DNA of 64,000 bases, from the NCBI GenBank assembly GCA_977020255.1, contig CDROCS010000890.1, positions 62,001 through 126,000 on the forward strand. The letters run 5' to 3'. Below the pieces are notes generated by a model. The model worked only from the letters and a program-made list of their open reading frames with translations. It made no database searches and was not told where the DNA came from. The position numbers were made by a program, and so were the translations under genes. Below are positions 14,699-51,562 of the stretch, one piece after another; positions within the stretch are counted from its first letter, which is position 1; each line of letters begins with the position of its first letter. The stretch comes from Obrimoposthia wandeli. Taxonomy: Eukaryota.

Positions 14699-17600
14699 CT
14701 AGTACTTTCTCCATCATTGGGAGTTTGCTGAAAATCGCATTTTACGTTTTTGACCTTTGTTCATTGTGTGCTGTTTATTTTGTAAAGTTTTCGTTATAAA
14801 AAATAAACTAATTAAACATAATAAATATTTTAAAATATAATATGAATTTTGAACAACTATTAGCATATGAAACACAACTGACATTTCTAATAAATTAAGT
14901 TATTTAAAATAAAAACATATGACAACAAAGTTTACGGAACACCTGAAACATTTCCGTGAATACGGGTTGAGAAGCACTACCTTAGAGGATAATGAAAAAT
15001 GGCAATGCTTTTCTAATATCACTCAACATATAATTAAATTATACATTTATCTTTAAAGACTGTGTCTTTAATCAGTCTATAAATATAGAAAATTGGCAAA
15101 CAATGAATTATATATAAAGAATTTGTAAGTTTTTAACAAAATTAAATTATATAAGTTTTTAATATATTTATCACATTATTATATGTTTTCTTTAACATTT
15201 ATTTAAGTTATGTAAATTGTTAAATATTTGAATTCTAAATAGTTTCAAACCACATTTATTTTATAAAATACAGCTTTTAAATTGTTTGTTGTTGACTAGT
15301 TTGAATGAATCATATAAAAGTGTCTCGTAATTATGAATTATTAATTTATAATTACATTTCAAATAGTTATAATTAAAACAAACTTTGAGCAAATTATTTT
15401 ATGCAAGTTTTCTGTTTTAGCAGACATATTAAATGAAAAGTAAACGATAAGATAAATATTCTTTACTCAAAATAATCAATATCAATGAATTTAGGAGCTA
15501 TTACTAAAGCATATTGTTTTCTTGTCATTCCTGAAAATATCTGGAGTTTTCTAAAATACACACCGAAAAGGGTTTTATTAGAATAAACTGAAATTTTCTA
15601 GTTTTGAATTAGTAACATATTTTTTAATTGAAAAGTTACTAGAAAATAATATTGTTTTTAATTTAAATGTTTAAGGTTATGAAATCAACGTTAATAGCTT
15701 ATTTCCTAAAAAAATTGTTCCCATTATTTGATGTTGCTTAGTAACGCAATTCACGTTTGTTGTTTATTTACGTCGTTTGGCGCTGACTCCAGATTTTTTA
15801 AATTTGTCATCCATTTTACTTTCTTTCTCTTTTCTTGTCAATTACAATATATAATTTATTTATTGCAAATATGTTTGGGCTGAATACGTTAATTCATTGG
15901 TCTTTTAGATACATTCATCAATAGGTGTATACATTTGAACAGTCTCTTCATAGAAATTTAATTTTATCTTATCTCGAAAATATATTTTTCGGTTGCGTGT
16001 GATGAAGTGTGGGATTATTGTATAAAAATATTTTTATAAATACAAAAAGTGAAAAGGAAAATTGTATATAAAGTGGATTCAAAAAATACATGAATGAATA
16101 AAAATAGTATTTTGTGACGAAAAACAATTTACATTGGATGGAACAGCCAACTGGTATTTTAATTTGTGTTGTAAAATAGTAATTATTATACAGAAATTAA
16201 CTAATAACGTCAATTATGTGTCATTTCGCCATCCCAACTGGGTTTATAGAAATACATTTCAAGATAACCAGATTTAAATAATTATCTTTAATCTTTAGGA
16301 ATGACAAAGCTTTATAACCGTAATTGTTCGTTGCACATGTGTAACACTGAAATATAATTTTTACAAAAAATAGTTGATTATTATTTCTGATAAAATGATA
16401 ATTTCTCAAATTGCCAGTGACAAAGAAATTCAAAACACCTCAATTTTCATGTACAAGAATGCAAATTAAAGATAATTAAATTTACAAATAATTTAGCAAA
16501 TTTCTTTTCAAACTTTTCTCCAAATAACACCAAAGAAGACGAACTTGTCAAATTCTGTTCCGATTTGCCATTCATTAAATTGCTTTCAATTCAGGATGAT
16601 TTCTGGATCTTTTATTACGATTCAATAACTTATTATTTCAAGAACCAAACTCCTTTGTAGAGGCAATAATTAAAATTGACAGATTTTTCATAAGCTGCAG
16701 ATTTTCTATCAGAACGGAAGCACGTCAAATCCAGATTCATCAGGCAATGCGGTATTTCCAGAGTTTTTCTTTACCCAAGAGACATTCCCTCAGGGCTTTA
16801 TAATGAGAATGAAGATAATAGTGTAAATAGGAGTGGAGCATTGCAGGAAATCTTCAGTTCTCAATTTGACTGCCATCAACCGTTTCGGTTTCAAAATAAA
16901 AATATTCATTTTTCGAGGGATAATGAAAGTGCTTATAGATTAATTAGTTTGGATCCATTTCGGACAATTAGTGTTGTAATCAGCCCAAGCTTCCATCGAT
17001 TGTCGAGTTATGGTTCATGTGTGATGCAGTAAGCAGCAGAAAAGTTAACTTTAGTGGTCAATGATGCTGACATGTATGAGTTATAAATCGTGAGAAGATT
17101 TCTCAAATAATCGATAAATGTTTTTCTTTAGAAAAATATATGTTCCAAAACTATTTTTTTAAAATTTGCGCCAGAATGTTCTTTTGAGTTTTCGCTAGGG
17201 GGTCTTTGGGCCAGAAGTCACACATCTACCTACTAGCGTGAAACCCTGAAAAATATAGATAAATGGTTTCAATTCGTTGTGGGTAACACCATGGTAATAA
17301 AAGTAGATTTGTTGTTTTCAAGATTATGTCGGTGCGGTTGTGTGCATATTACATAAATAGCAATTTCATGTACACACGATTAATCAGAAAATACCTTTAT
17401 AGACCATTGGTAAGACCTACTTGTTTAATAATTCACAGTCGAAGGTCAGATTAGTGATGAAACAACTCCAACACCAACAAACGCAATAAAACAAATTCTA
17501 TTTATCACACGTACACAATCAAGCAGGTAGTCAATTAGGAATTTCAGCAAATATTTCCTTCTATGATTGCTGAGATCCTCTGTCTATAGACGCTTTCATG

Positions 17601-17769
17601 TCATCCTCTAATGTCGAGTCACTAGCCGAATCGTCCATGGTTGCTGAACAGTCCAGACCACAGATAAACATACCATCAACACCGATACTAGGATTAGAGT
17701 TGGTATGAGTGACTGTTTATCTCGTATGCGTTTTCCTATTTCTTTGAATTACATAAAAGTTCATAGAAT

Positions 17770-18090
17770 GTCAATTGAGCTGAAATGGGCTTCATGACAA
17801 ACCTGGACGCCAGACTGGATCCCGAGACGAATAATTATTTAATGCATGGGAATGCACCTATCCACAATTTTTTGTGCTTAACGAGGAGCGTTCCTTTTTT
17901 GATTTTCATTGAGTCAGTGTTCTCAAAATTAAAGGACAAAATGCTGAATTAGATGAATAACCCTCCGGATTCCGGTCAACAACTCGATAAAGGATTGAGA
18001 AAGTGGAGGACCTGATTGGTACGGCTACGCACACACCAGATATTAGGATCTTCGTCCATATTATAAGCTAACCAAGAAGTTCTTCTTAAC
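17770..18090 (+). pseudogene. Tc1/IS630-like DDE transposase relic
   Basis: Degraded FMTNL...MHGNAPIH (cf. MDNAxIH) and IESVFSKLK (cf. NPIExxFSxxK). Confidence 0.35.
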
Positions 18091-19849
18091 TTCATTTAAA
18101 AAAAGTTATATTTGGTGATTGATTGAATTCATTTTACTTTGCAGTACTTTGAATTTTATTCCTTAAAATGTTGGTAAAATTTGACTAAATTTTTACTTTT
18201 AGCTTTGTTCTTTGTACAGCGATGACACCTGGTATTTAATCATTGTAATAATGGATTTTTTCATTTTGTTTGATTATACCTGAGGTTTACATTTTCATTA
18301 AAGTATAACTGGTGTCTTGTATAATTCTTTTTATCAAAAGATTTCGTATATCACTCCAGTAGGTAGAAGGATGGAGTATAGATCACTTGACCCCCCCCTA
18401 AAGGGTGTCACTCCATAAGGGTTTCACACCAATAAAGGTGTCTTGCCACACCATAAGGGTATATGTTGCCTCACCTCTGGTGAGGCAACATAGTTGCTCC
18501 CTGTATGGTGTGGCAAGATACCTTTGCTCATGGTGACACACTTATGGTGTGAGACACCTTTAGGGGGTCAAGTGGATCTAGACTCCATCCTTCTTTGATA
18601 TACCACTATGGTCATCCATAGTTTAAAGGGTCAAGTGGCTTAGCTTAGTCTCCACCCTTCTTTTTGAGATATACCACTATGAAAGGGTCAAGTGGCTTAG
18701 TCTCCACCCTTCTTTTTGAGATATACCACTATGAAAGGGTCAAGTGGCTTAGTCTCCACCCTTATTTTTGGTTAACCACTAATTCAAAGGATCAAGTGGC
18801 TTAGTCTCCACCCTTCTTTTTTGTGATCTAGTCCATAATGAAAATTTATGATAAAGTTCACACTTAACAATTAAGAATGTATGACGTAATCATACACACA
18901 CTATTTTATGTGAAAATTTAGGATAAAGTTCACACTTATCAATTAAGAAATGTGGTTTTTAACACACACATACACTATTTTATGTGAAATTTATGATAAA
19001 GTTCACTCTTATCAATTAAGAAATGCGGTTTTTTTAACACACACATACACTATTTTATGTGAAATTTAAACTAAAGTTCACTCTTATAAGTTAATGAATG
19101 TATTACGTAATCACACACATACTATTTTATGTGAAATTTAGATCAAAGTTTTTCCTAGGCTTTCACATTTATAGAATTATGATAAAATTTCTTTAAATAA
19201 CTTCAATTATATATTAAAATAAAAAAATAAAATAAGAAAGAAGTCAGAGAATAATACAAAATTAAACACATTTATTATGTAATTTCATAATATCATCTTC
19301 AAACTTAAGTGAATACTACATTTTAAAGTAAGAAAGTCCATTCTTTATACATTCTTTTCGTTTCAACGAATAAGTTACAACAATTAATAGAAAATTAGTA
19401 AAAATATTAATTTATTTGAATATTTGAATGAGAGTTTGAATAAAATGAGAGGAAGATAGATATGAATGTAAATGAATGTAATAAATGCAATGAATGTCAT
19501 TTTACAAGTAAGATCTTAGCAGTGAATGTACTTTTAAAAATAAGAGTGTCGATAGTTTGATTGGTTGCAATTATAATATAGACTATAAGTAAAATTAAAA
19601 AGAGTTTTTGTTGAATAAATTATAGTTAGATTGAATGCAAGTATGACGAGCAAGTGATTGATAGTATGAATTCAATACAAGTAAATTAGGCTTTAGCAAG
19701 TGAATGTAATTTTAAAAATAAGAGTGTCGATAGTTTGATTGAATGCAAGTGTAATTTAGACTATAAGTAAATTAAAATAGAGTTTTTGTTGAATAAATTA
19801 TAGTTAGATTGAATGCTATAGTTTACAATAAATTTATGCATATATTCAC

Positions 19850-20630
19850 TTTAATATGTTGTAAGTTATTACTTTATTATAATTTTCAACAACAACTTCA
19901 AGTTGTTTACTTATTAAACATAAGTTTAATGTTTTGTACAATAAATTGACTTGTAAACATAATTTATTTTGGTATATTTTCAATTTAATATGTTGTAAGT
20001 TATTACTTTAATATAATTTACAACAAAAACTTCAAGTAATTTACTTGTAAACTACAATATTTATTTGTTGTTGTATATATTCAGTTTAAAAATGTTGTAA
20101 GTTAATACTTTAATATAAATTACAATTCAAATCTTCAAGTAATTTACTTATTAATCATAATTTTAATGATTTGATCAATAAATTGACTTGTAAACATAAT
20201 ATAATTTGCATATTTTCAATTTAATATATTGTAAGTTATTACTTTATTATAATTTTCAACAAAAACTTCAAGTAGTTTACTTATTAATCATAAGTTTAAT
20301 GTTTTGTACAATAAATTGACTTGTAAACATAATTTATTTTGGTATATTTTCAATTTATTTGATGTAAATTATTACTTTTATATAATTTACAACCAAAACT
20401 TCAAGAAATTTACTTAATAATCATAATTTTAATGATTTGATCAATAAATTGACTTGTAAACATAATATAATTTGCATATTTTCAATTTAATATATTGTAA
20501 GTTAATACTGTAATATTTCATTACATAAAAAGTAATTCATAGTTTACTGTCGTTTACTATAAATTTACTTGTAAACATAATATATTTATGCATTTATTCA
20601 CTTTAATACGTTTTAAGTTATTAGAATTTG
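19850..20630. repeat. Central AT-rich tandem array of the foldback element
   Basis: Repeated TAATATGTTGTAAGTTATTACTTT...CAACTTCAAGT...GACTTGTAAACATAAT modules with a period of about 120 bp. Confidence 0.75.
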
Positions 20631-20679
20631 TGTTCTTGTATTCAATGATTAACTTTTATTAAACTATTATAACATTGAC

Positions 20680-21260
20680 CTCTTATTTTTTAAAATTACA
20701 TTCACTTACTAAACCCACTTACTTGTATTGAAATTCATACTATCAATCACTTGCTCGTCATACTTGCATTCAATCTAACTATAATTTATTCAACAAAAAC
20801 TCTATTTTAATTTACTTATAGTCTAAATTACACTTGCATTCAATCAAACTATCGACACTCTTATTTTTTTAAAATTATCTACCTGCTAAACCCACTTACC
20901 ACTTGTATTGAAAAATTCAAACTATCAATCACTTGCTCGTCATACTTGCATTCAATCTAACTATAATTTATTCAACAAAAACTCTATTTTAATTTACTTA
21001 TAGTCTAAATTACACTTGCATTCAATCAAACTATCGACACTCTTATTTTTTTTTTAAAATTACATTCACTTGCTAAACCCACTTACTTGTATTGAAATTC
21101 ATACTATCAATCACTTGCTCGTCATACTTGCATTCAATCTAACTATAATTTATTCAACAAAAACTCTATTTTAATTTACTATTTATAGTCTAAATTACAC
21201 TTGCATTCAATCAAACTATCGACACTCTTATTTTTTTCTAAAATTACATTCACTTGCTAA
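20680..21260. repeat. ~180-185-bp unit repeated about 3 times in the right arm (about 2 inverted copies at 19520-19830)
   Basis: The unit CACTTGCTCGTCATACTTGCATTCAATCTAACTATAATTTATTCAACAAAAACTC...CTATCGACACTCTT is seen three times. Confidence 0.85.
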
Positions 21261-24200
21261 GACTCTTACTTGTAAAATGACATTCATACTTGCATGCATA
21301 ATTTTATTCATTTACATTCATTCTACCTCTCTTCATTTATTCAAACTCTCATTCAAATATTCAAATAAATTAATATTTTACTAATTTTCTATTAATTCCG
21401 TTGTAACTTAGTCGTTGAAACGAAAGGAAAATGTATAAAAAATGGACTTTCTTACTTTGTAAATGTTATTCACTTAAGTTTGAAGATATTATGAAATTAC
21501 ATAATAAATGTGTTTAATTTTGTATTATTCTCTGACTTCTTCTTTCTTATTTTATTTTTTTTATTTTAATATATAATTGAAGTTATTTAAAGAAATTTTA
21601 TCATAATTCTATAAATGTGAAAGCCTAGGAGAAAAACTTGATCTAAATTTCACATAAAATAGTATGTGTGTGATTACGTAATACATTCATTAACTTATAA
21701 GAGTGAACTTTAGTTTAAATTTCACATAAAATAGTGTATGTGTGTTAAAAAAAACCGCATTTCTTAATTGATAAGAGTGAGAACTTATCATAAATTTCAC
21801 ATAAAATAATTAATGTGTAATGTTAAAAACCACATTTCTTAATTGATAAGTGTGAACTTTATCCTAAATTTTCGCATAAAATAGTGTGTATTGTATAGTT
21901 ACGTCATACATTCTTAATTGTTAAGTGAACTTTATCATAAATTTTCATTATGGACTAGATCACAAAAGAAGGGGTGGGAGACTAAGCCACTTGATCCTTT
22001 GAATTAGTGGTTAACCAAAATAAGGGTGGAGACTAGACCACAAAAGAAGGGTGGAGACTAGATCACTAAAAAGAGAGTGGAACTAGATCACTAAGAAGAA
22101 TTGGAGACTAGATCACTAAAAGAGGGTGGAACTAAGCCACTTGACCCTTTCATAGTAGTATATCTCAAGAAGAGGTGGAGACTAAGCCATGACCCTTTCA
22201 TGGTGATATATCTCTCAAAAGAAGGGTGGAGACTAAGCCACTTGACCCTTTCATAGTGGTATATCTCAAAAAGAAGGGTGGAGACTAAGCCTCTTGACCC
22301 TTTAAACTATGGATGACCATAGTGGTATATCAAAGAAGGATGGAGTCTAGATCACTTGACCCCCCCCCTAAAGGGTGTCACACCATAAGGGTGTCACACC
22401 ATAAAGGTGTCTTGCCACACCATAAGGGTATATGTTGCCTCACCAGAGGTGACGACTTAATTTATTATTTTTAAGTTTGGGTAGGAAATGGAACTAATTT
22501 GGAATTTTAATTATATTTTTCTGGGAAGTACTATTTAAATTAATTTTCTTTTACATCAAATTATAAAGCAAAGATTAAAACTACACCTGTTTCCTAATTT
22601 TTTTGTAAATAAAAGTAAAAGCGTATTTTTGTTGAGTAAACTCAAATTTGCAAATGCCAAGTAACCTATTTGCAAAGTCTTTTGACTTCTTTTTACTTCA
22701 ATCACAGAAGCAAATTTGAGACACGTTAAAAGGTTTTTCGAAAGATTAGACAAAAATGTAAATAAACAACTTTCGGAAATCTAGCAAACTGAAAATCTCT
22801 ATTTTATCAGTAGCATTTTCTGTTTTGGTAATATCTAACTGGTGTAAAATCGAGAAATCGTCTTTGTTTTGAAATCAAATTGCCGGCCAAATCGTGTCGT
22901 CTGCAAATTCAAATAAATAGAGAGTGATTTTATTGTCCAGACAGATAACCGTATTCAGATCAGGTTACAGTCGCGAATAAATTATCTGCAAGCGACCATA
23001 AATTGTCATCTGGTCCACACGCAAAACTATAATCCCTCCCCTGTTTCCATCAGATTTTCTTTGCTGCTGACAAAGACACTGACGGTGATCACTGACCACT
23101 GTGAAGCTACATTTGATTTGGGATTTTATAATTGCAGATCGTTTTTCTGAAGTTAATTTCTTAACATAAACCTGAAAAGGGACATCATATTTTCAGCTTA
23201 AACACAAAGCAGTTCATTTGTTGTTTAGCCACTTTCGTGTTAATTACTCATAAATTAGCTTCATATTTACCACTGAAATTGGGAAACATCCAGAGCAGTT
23301 ATTAATGGTCAGAGGCAAAAGTGTCCATTGAGGCGTAGATAGATGGGAATTTTATTGCCAGAGATCGTGAGAGAAACGTTGTGACCAACCATCATAGTTT
23401 CACTCCACAGTATTTGCCATCGATTCGGACTCATTTGCGGCACAATGTGAGCATGGGGAGTTGGGAGTCTAGGTTCATGGAAGACTGCGTGATATAATTT
23501 ATTGTGTGAAGCTGATGATATGTTCGTACAACTCAAAAATATTTCAATGGAGCCATACACTAGAGAACAAAATTTCAGACAAAAGTTTTAATTTGAAGAA
23601 TTAATAGCACTTACTCTATTCGGCAAACATCACTATCTAAATTTATGTGAACTCTTCAATTTTCCTTCAACATTTTAAAGTACATTTTCTTCTTCCGTAC
23701 CTAGATGACTGAGAAAAATGTGTACAATAACAAATATAAGGAAACTTTCAATACAAAACGTCCTTAGATTAAAGTATATATAAAAGACAAAGAAAACCAA
23801 ATATATATTTAAAACATTCAACATCATTTCAAATCAGTTTCGTTTATTTTCCGTGAGAAATTTCTCGATATTATTTTGTTTTCTTTCTTTGATTGAAATC
23901 TACGACTTTTTTCAGATAATTGGGAAGATAAATGTCCTTTCGTAAAAAATCTGAACTACAATGATCATGATCTTACGTTTGCTTCGTATGTTCGATGTGC
24001 TGTGAGAAGATAAATGTTGTCATGTAACAAATAAAGTTTTTAGTTTCCCCCTTTTTATTGATAATGTTTGAGTTCCAATTGGCACATTTTTAGTGGAAAG
24101 AGTCAGAGTGGAAAATCTTTGTTGAATTCTCATAATTGAATTATCACCTCAAATCAGATATGTAAACAACGTCTCATGGTCAATTAAAACGTTAGGTAAA

Positions 24201-41094: not shown

Positions 41095-41859
41095 TGTTAT
41101 AAATGAATATTTTCCAATAATGTATTGAAGTTTGAATAGTTTCAAATAATATATATTCTTCTTTTAGAAATAATTTGTTCTTCTTTTAGAAATATATTCA
41201 TAAAATAATTTGTGTGATAATGAAAACTGAATGTTATATTTGAATAGTTTCAATAGTAATTGAAGTTTGAATAGTTTCAAATAATATATATTCTTCTTTT
41301 AGAAATAATTTGTTCTTCTTTTAGAAATATATTCATAAAATAATTTGTGTGATAATGAAAAAGATCATAAAATAATTTATTAGATCATAAAATAATTTGT
41401 TAGATAAGTCTAATAATTTTTGTGTCGATAAGTCTGATCGACGATTGCTATAAATAGCAATCGTCCAAATGTCAAATACGATGTCCATTGAGGGAGAGAA
41501 AGTTGATGAAGTATCAACACACAATCACATTCACATGTGTAAGGAAGAAGCTGCAACATTAATAATCCGTGATCTTTACACATAGCCTTCTCTTAACAGT
41601 CCACATATTACAATCCTCTACATCGCTGGTCATCTCAACACTGTCTTATTGCATGGTATGATGGACTATGTTGTGGAGAAAAGGGGGAAATGACAATACA
41701 GGAGAGATTTCAGTCAACACACATTCACACTGGATAATTTTGAGAGGGAAAAACAGTGATTGTACGAAAAAGAATATAGAGATTGTGAGAGAGGAGAGAG
41801 GATATACACACCACACACCGACACTAAAGACAGCACCAAAGTTTTTGTGTGTAGCTTCA
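41095..41859 (-). repeat. 3' LTR (765 bp)
   Basis: Minus strand TGAAGC...TAACA. Nearly identical to 53050-53814 (two substitutions seen by eye). Contains an internal ~135-bp duplication. Confidence 0.88.
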
Positions 41860-42991
41860 TGTTGTCCTCAGAATCAGAGGAGGTGAGGTCTATAACCTCG
41901 GTTAAGGCAGGAAAATTAGCGTTGGTTACGCGGGGAAAAGAGACGGTCAAACCACATTCTTTTAGCAGTTCTTGTTCTTTATGGAGGAAAATTTCTCGGG
42001 TCCATTGCGTGTCTATGAGGCTAGAGTGGGTATTCTTTTGTATTTCTTTATTGAAATACCACGAAACCATTCGAGCAAGTCCGGCTTGTTCTCTACGGTT
42101 CATTTCCATTTGAATAGTTTGTGTTGCCCCTAGATCAACCGTGTGCGAAAAATCGTTTTTTTGTAATCCTAAAACTTTGAGATCGTTGGATATTCCCGTC
42201 CCTACGAAAATATTGTCTCTTAGCAAGGATTGGACACGTTCTAACACTTCGACAGAATCAGGTTGGTTTCTTAACTTCCGTTCATTAAGGCCCGTTATTC
42301 TTGTCACATAATTCCTGATTCTGTCTCTGCTATTGCATTTCGTATCCAACACGATCTGTCCGCTTCTATTCATTATTGTAATGCTAGCTAGGGTGGGTTG
42401 TTTGTTCATTTTTACTACCATTTCACAATCGACAAAAAATATTTGAGGATTGTTGGGTATGATATTCAAATGGCAGACTTGAACGGGATTAGGTCGCACA
42501 TTTTGCTCCATGAAAAATATGTTATTTCCACCCGAAAAACGAATCATCAAATCGGGAGTTATTTGATGTCTCATTAATCTGTAAGAGTGGTTTTGCAGGA
42601 GAAGGATAGAAAAATGTTTGCTTTTCCTGTGTTTTAAAAATCCACGGCCTTTTGCTACGTGAATCTCAATGTCCGTGCATATTGGTAAGAAATTCATCAA
42701 CTCAAACAGTCTTTTTTCCGTTGGCTTTTTACTATTTATGTTGAGAATTATACTTTGTCTTGGGGTGTCTCTTAACTTAATGCTATTTGGAAGCTGGGTC
42801 TGATTGTCAAAAAGCTTTATTCCGTAATGGTTATGGAAATACCTTGTTCCAAACTGTCTTATTTTTCCATAAAGGAACTTAGCCATTTTCGCCATTTCTG
42901 GACGTTGTTCTGCTAACTGGACCGACTTCTCTCTCTTTCCCCGCGGCACCACCTGCCAGTTCAAATGAGGATTCGTGCTTGTGGGTTCCAT
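41714..42991 (-). CDS. DEDDh 3'-5' exonuclease (REX4/ISG20-like) with an unknown N-terminal domain; retroelement accessory gene
   Basis: ExoI FVDCEMV, IRNYVTRITGL, ExoII VGTGISNDLKVL, ExoIII THSSLIDT. Intact frame. Likely start MEPTS at 42991 directly after a CAG acceptor; the stop lies within the 3' LTR. Confidence 0.85.
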   Translation of the reverse strand: MEPTSTNPHLNWQVVPRGKREKSVQLAEQRPEMAKMAKFLYGKIRQFGTRYFHNHYGIKLFDNQTQLPNSIKLRDTPRQSIILNINSKKPTEKRLFELMNFLPICTDIEIHVAKGRGFLKHRKSKHFSILLLQNHSYRLMRHQITPDLMIRFSGGNNIFFMEQNVRPNPVQVCHLNIIPNNPQIFFVDCEMVVKMNKQPTLASITIMNRSGQIVLDTKCNSRDRIRNYVTRITGLNERKLRNQPDSVEVLERVQSLLRDNIFVGTGISNDLKVLGLQKNDFSHTVDLGATQTIQMEMNRREQAGLARMVSWYFNKEIQKNTHSSLIDTQWTREIFLHKEQELLKECGLTVSFPRVTNANFPALTEVIDLTSSDSEDNMKLHTKTLVLSLVSVCGVYILSPLSQSLYSFSYNHCFSLSKLSSVNVC

Positions 42992-43425
42992 CTGTAGGGT
43001 ATACAGATATAGTAAAAAAAATGTTGATCTTTTACATGCAAATATAAAAATTGTCAACTGTCTATCAAATGAAATGTTCCTGTTAGTTATTTTGTCTCTT
43101 TTTGTTAATCAAAAATCTGTAAATCGTTTTTGTCTTTATGTAACAAGTTTAAACAAACAAGGTATATAAATCAGATATGATTTTTTCATTTTTTAATATA
43201 TATTCTTATTACTGGTGTTATCAATATCAATATATACATATCTATACTGGTATATTCATTTTTTACCTATTCTTAATTTTATTATTACTACAGTATTTCA
43301 ACTAAAGTTAATGAATATTAATACCCATTCATAAACGCATTTCCTCTCCAAAAACATGCCAAAAGCCCAAACTCATTCTCAATTTTCTTTTATTTTATAT
43401 TTTATTTTACTCACTGGGGATTTTA

Positions 43426-43734
43426 CTAATTTTCACACCCGGAATCATCGCTTTCTCCCGGTTGAAATCCCATCAAACGATTAATTACTGATCTCAATGA
43501 TACGAGAGAGTTTAATGCTTCTCTGAGTCGTCGTACTAATAATTCCTGATTTGTTTGGCTATGTTCTAATCTTTCAATTGCAACGTCAAAAGCATTATTC
43601 ATTCGTTCACATTCCATTTCCTTGTCTTTTAAATGCGATCTCAGATTTATATTCTCTATTAACAATTTATTTTCCCATTTTTTCTATCTTTTATATCTTC
43701 TTCTATTATTTTGTACTAATTTTGAATTTCTCAT
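43426..43734 (-). pseudogene. Small basic/coiled-coil accessory ORF (~100 aa, one internal stop)
   Basis: MRNSKLVQNNRRRYKR*KKWENKLLIENINLRSHLKDKEMECERMNN...RRLREALNSL, with heptad character. Confidence 0.5.
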
Positions 43735-43835
43735 TTTCTAAAATGTTAAAAAGTTTTTAAGTCTTATTTTGAGAAAGAGAAAAAAAAATTAAATCTTTTG
43801 ATTTTTACAAATCAGTGTTGTTTTTCTCTTTGTGT

Positions 43836-45045
43836 TTATAGTTCTTGATTACCGTATCTATTGATGTATTGGATGAATTTGTACCACTTGGTATTAGGGA
43901 TGTTATGAGTGGACCTGGTGGTCCATACAGTTTGTTTAAGTGAAATGATTTTTAGTTTTTATTCTTTTAAAAGTTTTTATTTTTATTATTACTTTTATTA
44001 AGATGTTAAACATTTCAATTATTATTGCTATTATTATCTTAAATTCTGTATGATATATGTTTTGTGAATGATTTCGTTGACTAAAAAATATTATATGTTT
44101 TAAGTTCATCGATTTTGATGAATTTATTGTATTTTTTAAAAAGGTTGACTGGTTTTGTATGTTTTCTTTAGAAATGATTGATGATATTTTCTTAAATATT
44201 TTTGTTGTATATTGTGTTAAATATATTTTCATTACTTTTGTTGATTTTAATATAGGTTCTTTTATTTTTATTATTAGCCAACTCCCGCAAAAAAGAGTTG
44301 GTTGAAACATTTTTGATATCTTTTTTCCTATTGTTTCTAAAGTAGTTATGTTTTTGTAAGTATTCAAAATGTGTCCCCAACTTCTATACATCATTGGTTT
44401 ATTTGTGATTACACATTCTCTATATTGTATTATTATTCTCTCTGGATATCTTATATTTTTTATGGTTAAATTTGTTTTAGTTTGTGTTTTTTCTAATTGT
44501 TTTTCTGAGTTTTTCCAAAATTATCATTATGTCCTCTATATCTAATTCTAATGAGGGCTTTATCTAAGTCGTCTATTTTTAGTTGAAATTCCCATTTTAT
44601 CATTATTTTATGTTTTGATATATATTTCGCTGTTGTTTCTAATATTGATGCTAGGTATATGTGAGTTTCTATAGTTCTTTGATAAAGTGTAATGTTTTGT
44701 GTATTTGATTTTATTTTAATTTCATATTGTGTTTCATCTCTTAAGAATGGTATTGTATATTTTCGTGATTTTATTCCTATTATTGTTATGTTTTGTTTTC
44801 TGTCTTTTTGTGTAATTTGTATATTTCCAGTTTTGTTTATAAAGAGCGAGATTTTTAACTTTATAGATGTGATTTCTGGTATTATCGTAATTAAACCAAA
44901 TTTTTTTATAAGATGTGTTGTCGAGTCATGTTTATTTATAACATTTTTTATAGTTAGTTTTTTATCATTTAGTTTGTTAGCATTTGCTCCTTGTACGTTT
45001 TTACTTATGAAGAGATAAATTGCGAATATTATTAAAATTTTTGAA
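43836..45045 (-). pseudogene. Post-integrase predicted type I membrane protein with FN3-like ectodomain (frameshifted)
   Basis: In frame after IN: hydrophobic KILIIFAIYLFISKNVQG|AN (signal-like) and KYTIPFLRDETQYEIKIKS (FN3-like). Frameshift near 44515, hydrophobic KIIIAIIIEMFNILIKVII, short tail after another shift. Confidence 0.5.
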
Positions 45046-45199
45046 AATTCCTTTATTGATATAACTATTGCCTTATTCCATTTAGATTTTTTGTTTTTAA
45101 TATTTTTTCTCTGTATATCTTGTATTGGTAACATTTGTAAAACTGTGTTTTTTGTGTTTGATCTCAAATTATATTTGTGGCTTTTTACTGTTGTATTCT

Positions 45200-46270
45200 C
45201 TTCTGGTACTTGTCGACATCTATTTATGTGTGTTCTTATTTCTTTTGATTTTAGTTCATTGTCGAGTTTAGCTGTTATGTTAGTTCCATTGGTACTAATA
45301 ACTGTATATGGTCCTTTGTATGGTTTTGATAATTTGTGTGATAATCCTACATTGATTTGTGGATTGTGAATCATTATTTTACTTCCGATTTTTATATTTG
45401 ATGGTTTAGTTCTTCTATCATAATATTCTTTGTAATTTTCTTGTATGTTTTTTACAAATAATTTAGCCTTTTCAAATGCTAGTTTTATTCTTTCTCTAAT
45501 TTCTATTTTGTATTCAGGTATTTCTAGGTATTGTGTAGTAGGTTGTAGTAATGTTAGGTCAATAGGCATTTGCGGATCTCTGAGGAACATAAGGTAAAAA
45601 GGTGTTTCTCCTGTAGATGCATGTACTGATGTTCTATATGCAAAAAGGCATGGGGGTATGTGCAAATCCCAATCTGTTTGGTTGTTGTTTGTATATGATG
45701 CCATCATATCTTCGAGGGTTCTATTAAATCTTTCTACTAATCCGTCGGTTTGAGGGTGATATGGTGTTGTATTGATCTTTTTTATGTGAAAGATTTCAGC
45801 TATTGATGCTAATACATTATTTATAAATTCAGGACCTTTGTCGGTTAATAACTTTCGGGGTGCACCGAAAGTAAAAATAATTTTTTCGACTAAAACCTTC
45901 GCGATGGTTTCAGCCTTATGATCATGTGTTGGAAAAGCTTCTGGCCATCTTGTAAAATAATCTGAAAATACTATTATATATCGATTTCCTCGGGGTGTTT
46001 CAGGTAATGGCCCCATTACATCCATGGCAACAGTTTCCATGGGGGCCGATGGATACGGTATTGGTTTTAAAGGTATCTTTGTGGTACGTAAGGTGTTTTT
46101 TCTTTTAAGACATATTTCACAAGTATTACACCAATTTTTACATCTTCTTTCATATCAATCCAATAATATTTTAAATTTAATCTTGAATGTGTCTTTTTTG
46201 TTGACAGATGTCCTCCTAAAGCTCCGTTATGATATTGAAGGAGTAATTGGCATTGTATTTCTTTAGGTAT
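45200..46270 (-). pseudogene. Integrase (HHCC, DDE core, GPY/F)
   Basis: HNGALGGH...WCNTCEIC (restored across two frameshifts near 46140 and 46085), VAMDVMGPL, LLTDKGPEF, GLVERFN, KPYKGPYTV. Confidence 0.93.
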
Positions 46271-48600
46271 AACTAGTGAGTACAGATTTTTATCGTTTAA
46301 ATAATGTAAAATATTGTTACTGAATTTATAGCGAGATTCATGAGTTTTTAAATGTTTTCTTAATTTTTCATCTGTTGGAACTTGATTGATGGTGATATAC
46401 TTAATTATTTGTTGTAATTCCGTATCTTTGCTTTGAAGATCGGTGATTACTTTATCATCATATCGAGCCTTGATTATTGTAAAAATATTTAATTCGGTGT
46501 CATTGGAATTTATTACATTTACTTCTTCTCTTATTCTAGATAGGCAATCTGCATTGGCATTTGATTTACCTTTTCTATATTTAATTTCAATATCATATTT
46601 TTGGAGAATTAACGCCCATCTCATTAATCTAGATGTTGTATCTTTATGTAATGGTCTTTGATCAGTATAAACGTGAACTTTTCGACCTAATAAGTAATGT
46701 TTAAAATGTTCCATTGCGAAACAAATAGCGAGACATTCTCTTTCTATTGTTGAATAATTTATTTCGTGTTTTTTAAGACCTCTGCTTGCGTACGCTATCA
46801 CATGATCTTTTTCATTATTATCCTGTTGTCCTAGTACTGCTCCTAACGCGTATCCACTTGCGTCAGTCATTACTAGAAACGAGTTGTTGAAATTAGGATA
46901 TCTCAATATAGGTTTTTCTATCAATTTTTGTTTTAAGTACTCGTATGACTCTTGTTGTTCCGTTTCCCATTCAAATTTTTCATCCTTTTTAATAAGTTTG
47001 TTTAATGGTGTTGCTATTTGTGCAAAGTTTCTGATAAATCGACGATAATATCCTGCAAGTCCTAAAAATTCTTGTATATTTTTTACTGTTTTTGGAATTG
47101 GAAAATTCTTTATTTTTTCTATATTACTTTCATCTGGTTGAATTCCTTTTGCTGATACTGCGTGACCTAGATAATTCACTTTGTCTTTCATCCATTCACA
47201 CTTTTTTGGTTTTAATTTTAAACCTGCTATTTTTAATCTAAGAAATACATTTTCTAAATCTTTTAAATGTTCTTCAAAATTTTTTGAAAAAATTAGAATA
47301 TCGTCGATATAAACCATGACATGATCGGCGTCCATCAAAATGTGACTCATGCATCTCTGAAATGTTGCTGGAGCACCTGTTAATCCAAAAGGTAAAACGT
47401 TAAATTCGTATAATCCTTCTCCTGTTGAGAATGCTGTTTTTTCTTTATCTGATTCATCTATTTCTATCTGCCAATATCCACTTTGTAAATCTAAGATTGT
47501 AAATATTTTTGCATTTTTTAGTTTATCTAAGATTTCATCGATTCTTGGAAGCGGATATGTGTCTTTATGTGTGATCTCGTTTAATTTTCTGTAATCTACG
47601 CAAAATCTTAGTGAACCATCTTTCTTTTTTATCAAAACAACTGGAGATGTCCATGCTGAAAAACTTCTTCTTATGATTTTATTTTCTAACATTCCTTTTA
47701 CCTGTCTTTGAGCTTCTTCTCTGTAAGCGTATGGGATACGGTAAGGTCGTTGTTTGATTGCTGTATTAATAGTTAACGGGAGGTTATGTTTAATTAAATC
47801 TGTTCGTCCAAGGTCATATTCATTTTTTGCAAAAATTACGTCATATTTTTCCATCAATGATTTTAGTTTTGATTTCTCATAATCATTTAATCTAATATTT
47901 TCAAATTTAACAGTGGAATTGTCTTCTATTTTTTCATTATTAATTAATTCTATATTTTCTATAACACTTATTTTTCCAAGGCGTGTTCCTACTTTTAGAT
48001 GAATCTCGTTTATGTCTCCATTTAGTATTCTGATAGGTATTGTGTTATTTCTTATTTTACAGATTATATTTGGTAGAACGTAATTTAGTGTTTCTTGTTG
48101 ATATTTATAAGGTTCGAATAAGATGTCTTTTTCTGTAACTATGTTAGTTTCTAATTGTAATATTGTTTGTGTTCTAGGTTGAAGGATGATATCTCCTTTT
48201 ATTTCCAATTCGTATTCGCTTTTAGCGTTTGGTCTGTAAATGTCTTTAATTTGATTTTTCTCAAAGTCGAAGTGAAAATTGTTTCCTAATTTCCTCAATG
48301 TATCTATTCCTATTATCATCTGACATGGACAATTTTTCATTATTCTAGTAGGTATTTTTATAAATTTATCTCCTATTTTAAAAATACAATCTAATTTACC
48401 AATAATATTTACGGGTTGACCGTTTGGTGCTGTTATTTGACTGTTATCTGTGAGAAGTAGTAATATTTGGTGTGGTTTTAAGAAATATTCGTCCAAAACT
48501 GTTACGCTTGATCCTGTGTCAATTAAAGCTTTTAATTTATACTCATTAATTTCAACTTTTACATAAGGTCGTCTATCATTATCCATTTGATTTATAGTAT
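46271..48600 (-). CDS. Pol: aspartic protease, reverse transcriptase and RNase H, in frame with upstream env C-terminus
   Basis: RPYVKV...LIDTGSS; RQRPYRIP-like KQRPYRIP; LRFCVDYRKLN; LPFGL; YIDD at 47300-47311; MTDASGYALGAVL; ERECLAI. All within ORF 46067..49555. Confidence 0.95.
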
Positions 48601-48769
48601 ATATTGTTGGTGCAGTTGATTTTTGAACTTTTGTTTCTTCTTTATATTTTTCTAAATCGGGGTATTGTGTAGATTCTGTATTCTCTTTATTTTTATTGTC
48701 TACTATTTTTTGTAAATTTGTTTCTCGCATTTCGTTTGATAATGCGTTTACAGTATTTTGATGATGATT

Positions 48770-50620
48770 AAATATAAGAAATTTTGCCAAAAATGGAAAA
48801 CATCCTAATATTAGTTTCCATGTTAATCCTCCAACTTTATAAATATAGTATGTGGATAAAATTTGACTCAATAGTATTTTAAAGCATATTAGTAGTGCAT
48901 ATATTCCTACAAGTCCAGAAAATGCTTGTCCAAATATTAAAAATTTTCCCCATATTTTTGACATTGTATTTTTTGTAGCTTTTATGTAATGGTTTGGAGA
49001 AAGTAATAAATCATAATCAGGACGGCCAATTCCGTTTGGTACTGATCTTTCAATTATTTGTGTTAAAATTCGTGATCTAATTTGAGGAAATAAAATTTCT
49101 TTTCTTAATTTGTCTATGTCTTCTTGTATGTAAATACCTTTTGTATTGAGTTCATTGTCTGACTTTATTTCTATGTCGTTATTGAGGTCGGTTAATTGTA
49201 ATTTTAATGGTTGAGCGACTATGTCTCTTCTTGGGAGTGATATCCAAATATCCTTTGAGATTTGATAATGAGGTGCCATTATGTTTGAGCAATTCATTTC
49301 CTTTATACTGAATGTATTAAAAAGTATTATTCTGGTGATTGGTTCTACGAATAGTGAATGATTTTTATATGAAATTGGTAATTCTTTAGTGCATTTATTG
49401 TGATTTCTTATATTAACTATTACTTTTTGGCATTGATACGTATATAGTACCTCTCCCATTACTCTTCCGAAAGTACCATCTGGTAACGGTAATAATGGTG
49501 TTATTAATTCTGGATTTGTAGCAATAATTGCTAGTTTTGTTTTCAATACAGTCATTCATTATCGTTTCTTTATAAATTGCTTCTATTGTCATTAATCCTT
49601 TGTGATAAAAATAATCTAATTTATTATTGAAATAATCATAATTTTTTATATCAAATTTTGTTGGTGTAGTTTTTGCATTATAAATTTTTTCTTTACTTAC
49701 ATATATTCCTTTATAATTAGTTGTATAAATAGAGTGTCCACATCGGGATTCCTCTTTCTTTTTAATAAATCGCATACCTGAACCTTGTTCAGTTGACATT
49801 AAAATAGTTGGAGTTGATGTTTTTTGTATTTTTCTAGTTCTATATGTTTTAAGTATATTTTTTGGAATTCGTTGATCTAGCTCTGGATCATCTTTGAATC
49901 TTTGACCTTGAATTATTTGGAAATTTTCTGATTTTAGTAGTATTAATTTACATTGGTCTGTTTTTACCTTATAGTATAAAATTGAAGATCCTGTGTTACA
50001 ATATCCGATATTTGCTGCACAAAAAGGCATAGTCACCATGGTATTTGTAGATGGATCAAATGTTGCTTTAAATGTTCTTAGTTCTACCTCAAAGTTTTTT
50101 ATAACTACTAAACCATTTTGTTTAACTCCCATTACGACGTATGATCCTGTTGTGCATTCTCCGTCAGATTTGATAGTTCCTACCACTGTAATCATTTGTT
50201 GTATTATTTTGTTTTTTATTGCTTTTACTTTTATTTCTCTATCTATTCTCAGTTCGCCTGTTGCAAAAGCATCTTTACAATTTAACGCGTCAACAATTAT
50301 TGGTGTTTTTCCTAATGCTGGCTTAACAATTGAATTATGGCTGTGTTTGCCGCAATATGTTATGAATGTTTCCACATGTACTCTACATTCGAAAACTTCT
50401 GTATTTATGTAATCTGTTTCCTGGTATACATGAAATAACTTGGTGGTTTTAACTTTTACTTCATTTGGATCTGCGTCGGCGCATTGTTGTAAATCCATTA
50501 GTGAATATTTATTTTGTATACTATATTTTGAACAATCATATGCTTCAAGAGCATTTATAGGTTTTATAATATTTGTAATTATACATATCATAAATATTAT
50601 TTGAATTATTTTCCATAAAT
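48770..50620 (-). pseudogene. Envelope glycoprotein, class III fusogen-like (herpes gB/chuvirus G type); one frameshift near 49555
   Basis: Signal-like IIQIIFMICIITNIIKPINA|LEAYDC...YSLMDLQQC, C-rich ectodomain (ECRV...TYCG, GECTTG, FCAANIGYC), GEVLYTYQC...CTKELPI...FVEPITRI, and C-terminal TM FLIFGQAFSGLVGIYALLICFKILL. Confidence 0.75.
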
Positions 50621-50870
50621 TCTGGATGATTTTGTTAAAATTATATGTATTTTTAAGATTTGAATTTTTACTATTTTTTGGTGATTTTCGTTTATTTTTA
50701 TTTTTCGATTTTTTATTTTGTGTTTGAGTGGTTTGATTTATTTTTGTACTTATTTGTGTTCTTTTTTCTAATGTTAGACAACCGTTTCTAAATATTTCTC
50801 CGAATTCGGATTGAGAGTTAGTACTATTTGTGTTTTGCTCATTGTTTTGGTATTGCTGATGTGTTTCTTT

Positions 50871-51562
50871 TTAGCGATTATCTATTTCTTGTTGTCTTAA
50901 TCTCATCAATGCAACCTCCTCTGTTTCCTGATTTATATCAGTGTTTTCAATAGTATGTATTGGGTTTCTGTAAGCATATTGTTGATTTTGATTGTTAAAC
51001 TGTACTGTTTTTTGACTCTGTGGTTGTGGTAGTTGTTGTTTTATTGTTGTGTTACCAAATTGGTTCATCATTGTATTTAGTTTGCTACATTCATCAGTAT
51101 TGTGATTTTTCATATTACAAATTTTACAAAATTTTGTATTAGTATTAAAATATTTAGCTTGATTATTTTGATTATTGAAATTATTATATGGGCTTCTAAA
51201 ATTACTATTTGTTATTTGTCGATTATTTGTTCGTTGTTTATCTGTACAATAGGTGGTTCTGGGATGGCTACTGCTTCCGTTATTTCTGACGAACTATCCG
51301 AGTCAGATGTTTGTGGTGAAGGTAAACTCTCTGTATCTGAGGTTAAAGCTAGGTCCAGATGTTCTGAGAGTGGGGAAGTCTGTGTAAGTAAATCGTTATT
51401 TGTTGTAAAACTGATTTGTGATTTGGGTCTTTGAACTGTTTTTTCACTGGAGTCTGTTCTAACTAATCTTGTTTGAATTCTTCTCCAGTGAAGGCTAGCG
51501 CTACGTTTTTGTTTACTTATTTTGTGTGTCTGTTTTTGTGATAGATCTTTGGGTTTGTGTTA
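50871..51562 (-). pseudogene. Gag remnant with CCHC zinc knuckle; capsid domain apparently missing
   Basis: CKICNMKNHNTDEC (C-x2-C-x4-H-x4-C) at 51087-51128. An upstream Ser/Pro-rich frame joins via a frameshift near 51240. Confidence 0.7.

What the first reader, a model, noticed from the sequence alone, without database searches (positions are those of the whole stretch)
18365..18594. 230-nt imperfect terminal palindrome whose two arms match the two isomeric ends of a 4.1-kb foldback element
Seen: arm A (18365-18475), loop TCT, then arm A' with bulges. The far end (22334-22452) carries arm A, not the reverse complement of A', followed by the complementary loop AGA and GGTGA. Established: incompletely paired hairpin ends with flip/flop isomers mark hairpin-terminated linear DNAs (parvo/densoviruses, poxviruses). 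Inference: either an integrated non-autonomous derivative of a hairpin-ended replicon, or a right-end/left-end junction from a circular or tandem transposition intermediate of a TIR element (CAC...GTG tips).
Basis: partly seen in the sequence, partly recalled or inferred. Interest (0 to 1): 0.75.

Follow-up and report, generated by a model that had tools for sequence, protein, structure and literature searches.

The report
Hairpin-shaped ends of a Polinton transposon family
The 230-base palindrome is real, but it is the standard folded-back end of a large family of virus-like Polinton/Maverick transposons, and the 4.1-kb element here is a gene-less, partly damaged hitch-hiker of that family rather than a hairpin-ended virus or a junction between two elements.

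Summary

**What the palindrome is**
- It runs from 18365 to 18594, with stem energy -89.6 kcal/mol (z = -17).
- It is not peculiar to this locus. Its 22-nt centre occurs 1306 times in this 1.35-Gb genome.
- In all 28 copies read first, it lies at the outer edge of an element, just inside a 7-nt tip (AGTAGGT; window 18358).
- All 9 complete elements read have a 6-bp target-site duplication.

**What family it belongs to**
- The same ends flank 12.2-kb elements that encode a protein-primed PolB, an rve integrase, an A32-type ATPase and a probable capsid protein. These are Polintons/Mavericks.
- The window element (18358-22452) has no genes. It shares about 0.9 kb of each end with them, so it is a non-autonomous foldback derivative.

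**Why the ends looked like isomers**
- The outer and inner arms always differ slightly.
- This copy's left inner arm is unusually mutated.
- Its right end has lost the outer arm through a deletion.

**Orientation of the loop**
- It is fixed in 164 of 180 ends. This is not the roughly equal mix expected of flip/flop.
- The other 16 (9%) include inverted loops and converted arms. These, together with seven base pairs that change on both arms, show that the two arms co-evolve.

Whether the ends ever fold as hairpins is inferred, not shown.

Earlier first-reader notes of this scan recorded hairpin-like Polinton ends and Polinton-ended foldbacks elsewhere in this genome.

The parts
18352..18357 (+). 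Left copy of the presumed 6-bp target-site duplication (CACTCC). The right copy is missing.
   Evidence: All 9 complete elements read have a 6-bp TSD directly outside the tip. Nothing matching follows 22452.
18358..18364 (+). Element tip AGTAGGT, unpaired and outside the palindrome.
   Evidence: Similarity among 28 copies begins exactly here. It is unpaired in the predicted fold.
18365..18475 (+). It contains 2.5 copies of a 16-bp unit at 18401-18442.
   Evidence: Tip plus outer arm has 96.1% mean pairwise identity among 38 ends.
18476..18478 (+). Loop TCT, the common orientation when read from outside inward.
   Evidence: TCT in 164 tip-anchored ends against AGA in 16.
18479..18594 (+). It is unusually diverged in this copy.
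   Evidence: It differs from the outer arm at 27 positions, against 8-21 in most other copies. Extra indels are visible in alignment A1.
18595..19816 (+). Left long inverted arm, with 52-bp and 72-75-bp tandem sub-repeats.
   Evidence: Inverted repeats I1-I13, 86-100% complementary. TRF arrays. The first ~870-995 bp of each end of the element (tip and palindrome included) match the TIR of the 12.2-kb Polinton.
19817..20679 (.). Central non-inverted core of 133-bp (236-bp) tandem repeats. No ORF.
   Evidence: No ORF of 150 aa or more lies in the element.
20680..22333 (+). Right long inverted arm, with 182-bp, 75-bp, 25-bp and 52-bp sub-repeats.
22334..22444 (+). Inner arm of the right terminal palindrome, with 16-bp units at 22371-22411.
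   Evidence: It carries the inner-arm markers (ACACC, GTGTC, CCATAAAGG) seen in other copies.
22445..22447 (+). Loop AGA. It reads TCT from outside inward, so it is the common orientation and not a flipped isomer.
   Evidence: This is the same orientation as both ends of the complete elements.
22448..22452 (+). First 5 nt (GGTGA) of the right outer arm, where the element breaks off. The rest of the arm (about 106 nt), the 7-nt tip and the second TSD copy are missing. TGA at 22450-22452 could belong to either side of the break.
   Evidence: A contig at single-copy depth joins 18357 to 22450 through 252 nt.

Best explanation
The 230-nt palindrome is the standard terminal module of the inverted repeats of one Polinton/Maverick family in this genome. 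Each end has a 7-nt tip (AGTAGGT), an outer arm of about 111 nt, a 3-nt loop and an inner arm of about 111-125 nt, followed by sub-terminal tandem repeats. The 12.2-kb autonomous members encode protein-primed PolB, rve integrase, packaging ATPase and a capsid candidate, and insert with 6-bp target duplications. The window element (18358-22452) is a gene-less foldback derivative that keeps only these ends plus satellite-like filler, so it depends on the family's proteins in trans. Its left end is complete, though its inner arm is unusually mutated. Its right end lost the outer arm, tip and TSD in a deletion that starts 2-5 nt past the centre of the palindrome. That loss, plus the small fixed difference between outer and inner arms, produced the look of 'two isomers'. 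How the end works is inferred. The terminal ~120 bp is the cis-acting end that the integrase and the replication machinery recognise. The two arms are kept complementary, either by selection or by arm-to-arm copying. In single-stranded replication intermediates each end can snap back on itself, which would leave the 7-nt tip as a free 3' template beside a duplex stem. I put identity and architecture at about 0.85-0.9, and an actual hairpin role at about 0.4.
For: Shown. (1) The whole palindrome recurs: 80 listed matches from 588 first-look candidates, 40 of them scored, and 1306 exact 22-nt centres. (2) In 28 of 28 loci the interior lies on one side only, and similarity starts at AGTAGGT. (3) All 9 complete pairs have a 6-bp TSD: CCTGTA, TACCCC, GATATA, CATCTG, CATGAT, GTGGTG, GTCACA, TACCTA, GTCCTT. 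(4) The same tips flank 12.0-12.2-kb elements with ~925-bp TIRs that are 96-97% identical. These encode DNA_pol_B_2 (E 1e-14), rve (E 4e-10) with chromo, and a Pox_A32-type ATPase. A 416-aa ORF is nearest to DJR-like capsid clusters. (5) The window element matches the first ~870-995 bp of those ends at 82-88% and has no ORF. (6) Conservation falls from outside inward: tip plus outer arm 96.1%, inner arm 87.7%, next 250 nt 65.8%. (7) In 40 ends, 7 of 85 stem pairs changed on both arms with pairing kept, in several sub-lineages. (8) Published Polinton/Maverick hallmarks match: 6-bp TSD, 100-1000-bp TIRs, short terminal tandem repeats, and 5'-(AGT)2...(ACT)2-3' end motifs in vertebrates (PMC4196379, PMC8097293).
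Against: There is no direct evidence that the ends ever form hairpins or cruciforms in vivo. The inner arm tolerates G-run expansions and indels, and a mismatch is conserved (outer ACTCC against inner ACACC), so perfect pairing is not required. Co-variation of the arms could come from copying between arms without any selection for structure. The window copy has only one TSD copy, so its own insertion signature is incomplete. An adenain-like protease was not detected, and the capsid assignment is only a lead. I could not read Kapitonov and Jurka 2006, so I cannot exclude that such nested terminal palindromes have been described before.
Confidence: 0.85

Rival explanations
1. The identity is the same (Polinton end), but the palindrome never acts as a hairpin. 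It is simply two inverted sets of duplex protein-binding sites: the 27-bp end motif plus 2.5 units of 16 bp per arm. Occasional copying between the arms keeps them alike.
For: Each arm holds 2.5 copies of a 16-bp unit containing the near-palindrome GGTGTCACACC. The end motif recurs in the 52-bp sub-terminal repeats. The outer arm is far better conserved than the inner arm. A fixed mismatch and G-run expansions are tolerated. Arm-conversion events are visible (L064, L025, L028).
Against: Pairing is kept at 7 positions that changed on both arms in separate sub-lineages. The arrangement persists in 1306 ends even though long palindromes are prone to deletion. Neither observation proves folding.
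Confidence: 0.4
2. The element is a derivative of a hairpin-terminated linear replicon (parvovirus/densovirus-like or poxvirus-telomere-like), whose ends exist as flip and flop isomers.
For: The terminal palindromes are long and imperfect, with conserved mismatches. About 9% of ends carry the inverted loop, and a few have swapped or converted arms.
Against: The loop lies 118 nt inside the integrated end, with a 7-nt tip and a 6-bp TSD outside the palindrome. Orientation is 164:16, not about 1:1. About five of the 16 inverted cases are loop-only inversions with normal arms. The ORFs of the 12-kb copies that I scanned gave PolB, integrase and ATPase hits and no Rep/NS1 or resolvase hit.
Confidence: 0.03
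3. The palindrome is a head-to-head junction of two elements, or of a circular or tandem transposition intermediate, whose real tips are TCACC/GGTGA.
For: The loop is flanked by TCACC...GGTGA, and the far end stops just after GGTGA.
Against: In 28 of 28 loci the outer arm abuts unrelated host DNA (mean flank identity 17.5%), with a TSD next to AGTAGGT. Of 1306 centres, only 24 places show GGTGA followed by two bases other than G, and some of these are paired sequence variants.
Confidence: 0.01
4. The palindrome or the truncated far end is an assembly artefact.
For: Palindromes and high-copy repeats are hard to assemble. A short-read contig joins the two flanks with only 252 nt between them.
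Against: The same architecture is assembled at over a thousand independent loci with different flanks. The 252-nt contig has single-copy depth of 41.8, whereas the summed depth laid on the element is 10^5-10^6, so it is more likely an allele without the element than a collapsed repeat.
Confidence: 0.03

Closest known systems
Polinton/Maverick self-synthesizing, virus-like DNA transposons (polintoviruses)
   Same: 6-bp TSD, long TIRs (~925 bp), a 5'-AGTAG...CTACT-3' end motif close to the vertebrate (AGT)2/(ACT)2 motif, protein-primed PolB, rve integrase with chromodomain, A32-type ATPase, a capsid-like ORF, and a length of 12 kb (PMC8097293, PMC4196379).
   Different: The outermost ~240 bp of each TIR is itself a long palindrome whose arms co-vary. 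I found no such feature in the papers I could search. The family has also produced abundant gene-less foldback derivatives and a few free-standing palindromes.
Non-autonomous derivatives of DNA transposons (MITE-like or deletion derivatives)
   Same: The window element keeps only the ends of the autonomous element, has no ORF, and occurs in many copies 2.7-10.4 kb long with the same TSD length.
   Different: It is not miniature. Its arms (~1.45 kb) extend beyond the helper's TIR through added tandem repeats, and a 133-bp satellite forms its core.
Foldback-type elements (Drosophila FB; Galileo of the P superfamily)
   Same: Long, internally repetitive inverted arms, a mostly non-coding body, and great length variation between copies (PMC3573991 abstract for Galileo).
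   Different: The TSD is 6 bp, against 9 bp (FB) or 7 bp (Galileo) from my own knowledge. The helper is a Polinton, not a MULE-like or P-like transposase.
Adenovirus-type 'invertrons' (linear genomes with TIRs and protein-primed replication)
   Same: Terminal inverted repeats, a protein-primed PolB, and a short tandem repeat at the very tip (GTAG GTAG within AGTAGGTAG) of the kind used for sliding back. That function is inferred here.
   Different: Those genomes are thought to restore a duplex origin by pairing the two distant TIRs (panhandle). Here each end could do so alone by local folding. This is untested.
Parvovirus/densovirus ITR hairpins and poxvirus flip/flop telomeres
   Same: Long imperfect terminal palindromes with conserved unpaired bases, and rare inverted forms.
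   Different: The palindrome is not at the physical end, there is no equal mix of the two orientations, no Rep or resolvase was found, and integration uses an integrase with a TSD.
Quasi-palindrome template-switch mutation (from my own knowledge: Ripley-type strand-switch models)
   Same: Loop inversion with unchanged arms, arms made identical to each other, and one inner arm extended by copying the tip and 9 nt of flank (L028) are the expected footprints.
   Different: Here they are seen only as fixed differences among genomic copies. The process itself was not observed.

Membership tests
Polinton/Maverick | 6-bp target-site duplication | tested here: met
   9 of 9 complete elements of the family, both non-autonomous and 12-kb. 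In the window copy only the left copy (CACTCC, 18352-18357) survives.
Polinton/Maverick | Terminal inverted repeats of roughly 0.1-1.4 kb | tested here: met
   C11 element: ~925-bp TIRs at 96-97% identity. Window element: arms 18358-19816 and 20680-22452.
Polinton/Maverick | 5'-AG...CT-3' termini with a short terminal tandem repeat | tested here: met
   AGTAGGT(A/G)G...ACCTACT in all ends aligned. Compare (AGT)2//(ACT)2 in PMC8097293.
Polinton/Maverick | [quoted passage not shown] | tested here: met
   PF03175, E 1.2e-14, in L050:2407-3594(-) of a 12-kb copy. Absent from the window element, which is therefore non-autonomous.
Polinton/Maverick | Retroviral-type (rve) integrase | tested here: met
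   PF00665, E 3.9e-10, plus chromodomain, in L050:6896-7939(+). Also found in L048.
Polinton/Maverick | FtsK/A32-type packaging ATPase | tested here: met
   PF04665 at 26.2 bits (cut-off 22.8) in the 220-aa ORF of two copies.
Polinton/Maverick | Double jelly-roll major capsid protein | tested here: inconclusive
   The 416-aa ORF is nearest to clusters carrying PF21738 DJR-like_dom (score 0.98, 225 of 256 features). There is no alignment-based test, and nothing was found in IMG/VR.
Polinton/Maverick | Adenain-like cysteine protease | tested here: inconclusive
   No Pfam hit in the ORFs scanned. Short or spliced ORFs were not examined.
Hairpin-ended linear replicons (parvovirus/densovirus ITRs, poxvirus telomeres) | The palindrome forms the physical terminus | tested here: not met
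   A 7-nt tip and the TSD lie outside the palindrome, and the loop is 118 nt inside the end.
Hairpin-ended linear replicons (parvovirus/densovirus ITRs, poxvirus telomeres) | Flip and flop orientations in about equal numbers | tested here: not met
   164 TCT against 16 AGA. 20 of 21 close pairs among the first 100 rows are in the standard orientation.
Hairpin-ended linear replicons (parvovirus/densovirus ITRs, poxvirus telomeres) | Rep/NS1 nickase or telomere resolvase in the autonomous form | tested here: not met
   Pfam scans of 19 ORFs from two 12-kb copies gave none.
Foldback (FB) / Galileo-type elements | Long, internally repetitive inverted arms | tested here: met
Foldback (FB) / Galileo-type elements | 9-bp (FB) or 7-bp (Galileo) TSD and a MULE-like or P-like transposase | tested here: not met
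   The TSD is 6 bp and the helper is a Polinton. The TSD lengths of FB and Galileo are from my own knowledge.

The most novel reading that the evidence does not exclude
The terminal palindromes are working structures of Polinton replication. In displaced or excised single strands, or as cruciforms in duplex DNA, each end folds by itself into a ~110-bp stem that presents the 7-nt tip as the template for protein priming. The stem may also be cut by the endonuclease-VII-like (CxxC...DHDH...CxxCN) domain that lies just upstream of the polymerase domain in this family's PolB. On this reading, the rare loop inversions, arm conversions, free-standing palindromes and centre-proximal deletions are footprints of that folding. 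This would give Polintons a hairpin-assisted origin, halfway between adenovirus-type and parvovirus-type ends.
Probability: 0.15. Interest if true: 0.75.

Novelty: new variant of a known kind. Interest (0 to 1): 0.4.

Why it matters
How Polintons/Mavericks replicate and integrate has never been shown experimentally, and their cis-acting ends are undefined. This family offers over 1300 ends with a clear architecture: an unpaired tip, an almost invariant outer arm, an inner arm that co-varies with it, rare inversions, and free-standing palindromes. It also has many gene-less passengers. Together these turn the question 'what does the machinery recognise, and is a folded end involved?' into something testable. 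The family also shows that foldback-type, protein-less elements in animal genomes can be Polinton dependants. Finally, the window copy illustrates how such palindromes may seed deletions that take host DNA with them.

Tried and rejected
- **61-nt centre patterns.** With 2 mismatches they could not separate orientations, because each palindrome matches both patterns on opposite strands. They did reveal the 12-kb pairs.
- **Public collections.** The palindrome centre has no exact match in the viral or metagenome contig collections. The capsid-candidate ORF has no close relative in IMG/VR. So there is no evidence for or against free viral genomes.
- **Further protein searches.** phmmer of the endonuclease/PolB segment against the PDB gave nothing, and neither did NCBIfam.
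- **Truncation hot spot.** The test was inconclusive. 24 places have GGTGA followed by two bases other than G, against 1306 intact centres, and some of the 24 are paired variants.
- **Second haplotig.** Both flanks are unique in the assembly, so I could not read the 252 nt that a short-read contig places between them.
- **Papers not held.** Kapitonov and Jurka 2006 and the Krupovic and Koonin 2015 review were not available.
- **Organism.** It is coded and I did not identify it. The genome is AT-rich (about 30% GC), and earlier notes call it an animal.
- **Limits I kept.** I built no consensus of the element and single out no copy as intact.

Full report
**Observation**

- Arm A is at 18365-18475, the loop TCT at 18476-18478, and arm A' at 18479-18594.
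- The far end has an arm at 22334-22444, the loop AGA at 22445-22447, then GGTGA to 22452.

A differs from the far-end arm by 3 mismatches and 2 single-base indels (about 95% identity). It differs from the reverse complement of A' at 27 of about 119 aligned columns. As single-stranded DNA, 18358-18601 folds into one hairpin of -89.6 kcal/mol, with z = -17.3 against 200 shuffles. The region between the ends is a foldback. Inverted arms 86-100% complementary, built of 52-, 72-75- and 182-bp tandem repeats, surround a core of 133-bp repeats. It has no ORF of 150 aa or more.

**The palindrome is a family feature**

- A search of the window's own 1.35-Gb assembly with the 230 nt returned full-length matches at dozens of loci (588 candidates, of which only 40 were scored).
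- Its exact 22-nt centre occurs 1306 times.
- In all 28 loci fetched, the element interior lies on one side of the palindrome only.
Upstream flanks are unrelated, with 17.5% mean identity.

So the palindrome is the end of the element, not a junction, and the true tip is not TCACC/GGTGA.

**Target duplication and helper**

Nine elements with both ends on one contig all have a perfect 6-bp duplication directly outside the tips.

The centre pattern also hit many pairs about 12 kb apart. I fetched three (contigs C11, C15 and C140):
- They are 12.0-12.2 kb long, with the same tips and ~925-bp TIRs at 96-97% identity.
- They encode DNA_pol_B_2 (protein-primed PolB), an rve integrase with a chromodomain, and a Pox_A32-type ATPase.
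- A 416-aa ORF is closest to clusters carrying a double-jelly-roll domain.

With the 6-bp TSD, long TIRs and the AGTAG...CTACT ends, this matches the published definition of Polintons/Mavericks (PMC4196379; PMC8097293, which reports 6-bp TSDs and (AGT)2//(ACT)2 end motifs in vertebrates; PMC11296320).

The reading frames are interrupted differently in the three copies. For example, the polymerase is in three stop-free pieces in C140 and two in C11 and C15. I describe this only and single out none.

The window element matches the first ~870-995 bp of each end of the 12-kb element at 82-88% and nothing of its genes. It is therefore a non-autonomous derivative. Other copies of this gene-less subfamily are 2.7-10.4 kb long and have no stop-free stretch of 120 aa or more.

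**Why the ends looked like isomers**

In the ends with the common loop, the outer arm carries ACTCC and a plain C-run. The inner arm, read as its complement, usually carries ACACC and a C-run interrupted by T, in the same orientation at left and right ends. This holds in the gene-less and the 12-kb subfamilies alike.

- The window's arm A is a normal outer arm.
- Its far-end arm is a normal inner arm.
- The far-end loop AGA reads TCT from outside inward, the usual orientation.
- The odd piece is A', the left inner arm. It has 27 differences from its partner, against 8-21 in most copies, including a small new inverted duplication.

The right end simply stops 5 nt into the outer arm. The rest of the arm (about 106 nt), the 7-nt tip and the second TSD copy are absent.

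A short-read contig at single-copy depth (41.8) joins 17600-18357 to 22450-22900 with 252 nt between them. The summed depth laid on the element runs to 10^5-10^6, so those 252 nt are probably unique DNA. I infer an allele without the element. In the window haplotype, one deletion would then have removed the right outer arm together with about 250 bp of host DNA, with TGA shared at the joint. I could not read the 252 nt, and both flanks are unique in the assembly, so this remains an inference.

**Is there flip/flop?**

I anchored on the tip so that orientation is defined. The loop reads TCT in 164 ends and AGA in 16. Among the first 100 centre matches, 20 of 21 close pairs are in the standard orientation. 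This is far from the roughly equal mix expected of hairpin-transfer replication.

The 16 exceptions are mixed:
- About five have normal arms and only the loop inverted.
- One has both arms of the inner type, with 3 differences between them (L064).
- One has a largely outer-type inner arm (L025/L067).
- Two are reverse readings of double-tipped palindromes.
- The rest are degraded.

In L028, the inner arm runs on through a copy of the tip and 9 nt of the flank, in inverted order, before returning to the interior. That is the signature of a strand switch across the palindrome.

Eight palindromes of 223-240 nt carry a tip at both ends. Of the two I could read, one is the extended end in L028. The other (L053) is a free-standing unit with its own 6-bp TSD, GCAGTG. 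It could be a deletion product between the directly repeated arms of the two ends, or a mini-element.

**Are the two arms kept complementary?**

In an alignment of 40 ends, 85 stem pairs are predicted. At 7 of them both sides changed and pairing was kept, in separate sub-lineages:
- A to G at the stem base, matched by T to C.
- GAT to AGC, matched on the other arm.
- CACTTGA to CAATTTA, matched by TCAAGTG to TAAATTG.

Conservation falls from outside inward: 96.1% for tip plus outer arm, 87.7% for the inner arm and 65.8% for the next 250 nt. Each arm holds 2.5 copies of a 16-bp unit with the near-palindrome GGTGTCACACC. The outermost ~27-bp motif recurs, inverted, at the base of the inner arm and in the 52-bp sub-terminal repeats.

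**Mechanism**

Shown: this is the end of a Polinton family, and the ends alone suffice for a gene-less element to multiply with the family's 6-bp signature.

Inferred:
- The terminal ~120 bp is what the integrase and the replication proteins recognise.
- The arms are held together either by selection for a folded form or by copying between arms.
- In single-stranded intermediates, each end could fold locally and leave the 7-nt tip, which contains GTAG twice, as a free template for protein priming.

I rate a real hairpin role at about 0.4 and a duplex-only binding-site array at about the same.

The PolB ORF carries an endonuclease-VII-type motif (CxxC...DHDH...CxxCN) just before the polymerase domain. 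A weak hit of this kind was tabulated for insect Mavericks (PMC5803895). Its link to the palindromes is speculation.

**Comparison and novelty**

Membership in Polinton/Maverick is met on TSD, TIRs, end motif, PolB, integrase and ATPase. Capsid and protease are open. The hairpin-ended replicon model fails on the position of the palindrome, on orientation ratio and on enzymes. Foldback and Galileo elements resemble it in shape only.

In the papers I could search, I found no description of a long nested palindrome at Polinton ends. I could not read the founding paper.

First-reader notes of this scan on other DNA of this genome already recorded 'Polinton with hairpin termini' (s1-220495), 'the other TIR keeps only one arm' (s1-232400), and gene-less foldbacks with Polinton-type ends (s1-208399 and others). 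Here the architecture, the helper, the orientation census and the arm co-variation were tested.

Verdict: a new variant of a known kind, of moderate interest.

Noticed in passing
L048:5454-6050 (-) and L050:4718-5137 (+), in 12-kb elements on contigs C11 and C140: The Polinton encodes a small protein with a single TBP repeat. Pfam TBP scores E 1.7e-11, and the one repeat aligns to both halves of an archaeal TBP (1mp9, E 3e-13). Earlier notes of this scan describe the same gene in this genome.
   Followed up: partly
L050:2407-3594 (-), residues 169-210; L048:6024-8771 (+), residues 553-594: An endonuclease-VII-type His-Me finger (CxxC...DHDH...CxxCN; Pfam PF02945, 28 bits) lies directly upstream of the protein-primed PolB domain. 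T4 endonuclease VII cuts branched and cruciform DNA, which is suggestive beside 240-bp terminal palindromes.
   Followed up: partly
L028:1494-1760 (contig C1146:210048-210283): The inner arm of a terminal palindrome continues through an inverted copy of the 7-nt tip and 9 nt of host flank before rejoining the element interior. This is a footprint of strand switching across the palindrome.
   Followed up: partly
L053:1406-1637 (contig C516:410131-410362), plus seven more places listed: Palindromes of 223-240 nt with a tip at both ends. L053 is free-standing with its own 6-bp duplication, GCAGTG. The analogy is to solo LTRs, or to a mini-element.
   Followed up: partly
window 17600-18357 and 22450-22900: A 3481-nt short-read contig at single-copy depth joins the two flanks of the element through 252 nt that I could not read. 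It is probably an allele without the element.
   Followed up: partly
L013 and L022 (contig C695:711065 and 722828); L039 and L040 (contigs C315 and C810): Pairs of ends share identical host flanks. This points to segmental duplication on C695, and to duplicated or haplotype contigs for C315 and C810.
   Followed up: no
window 41714-51562: Large ORFs of a retroelement (1162, 515, 447 and 392 aa), noted by other first-reader notes on this window. They are unrelated to this finding.
   Followed up: no
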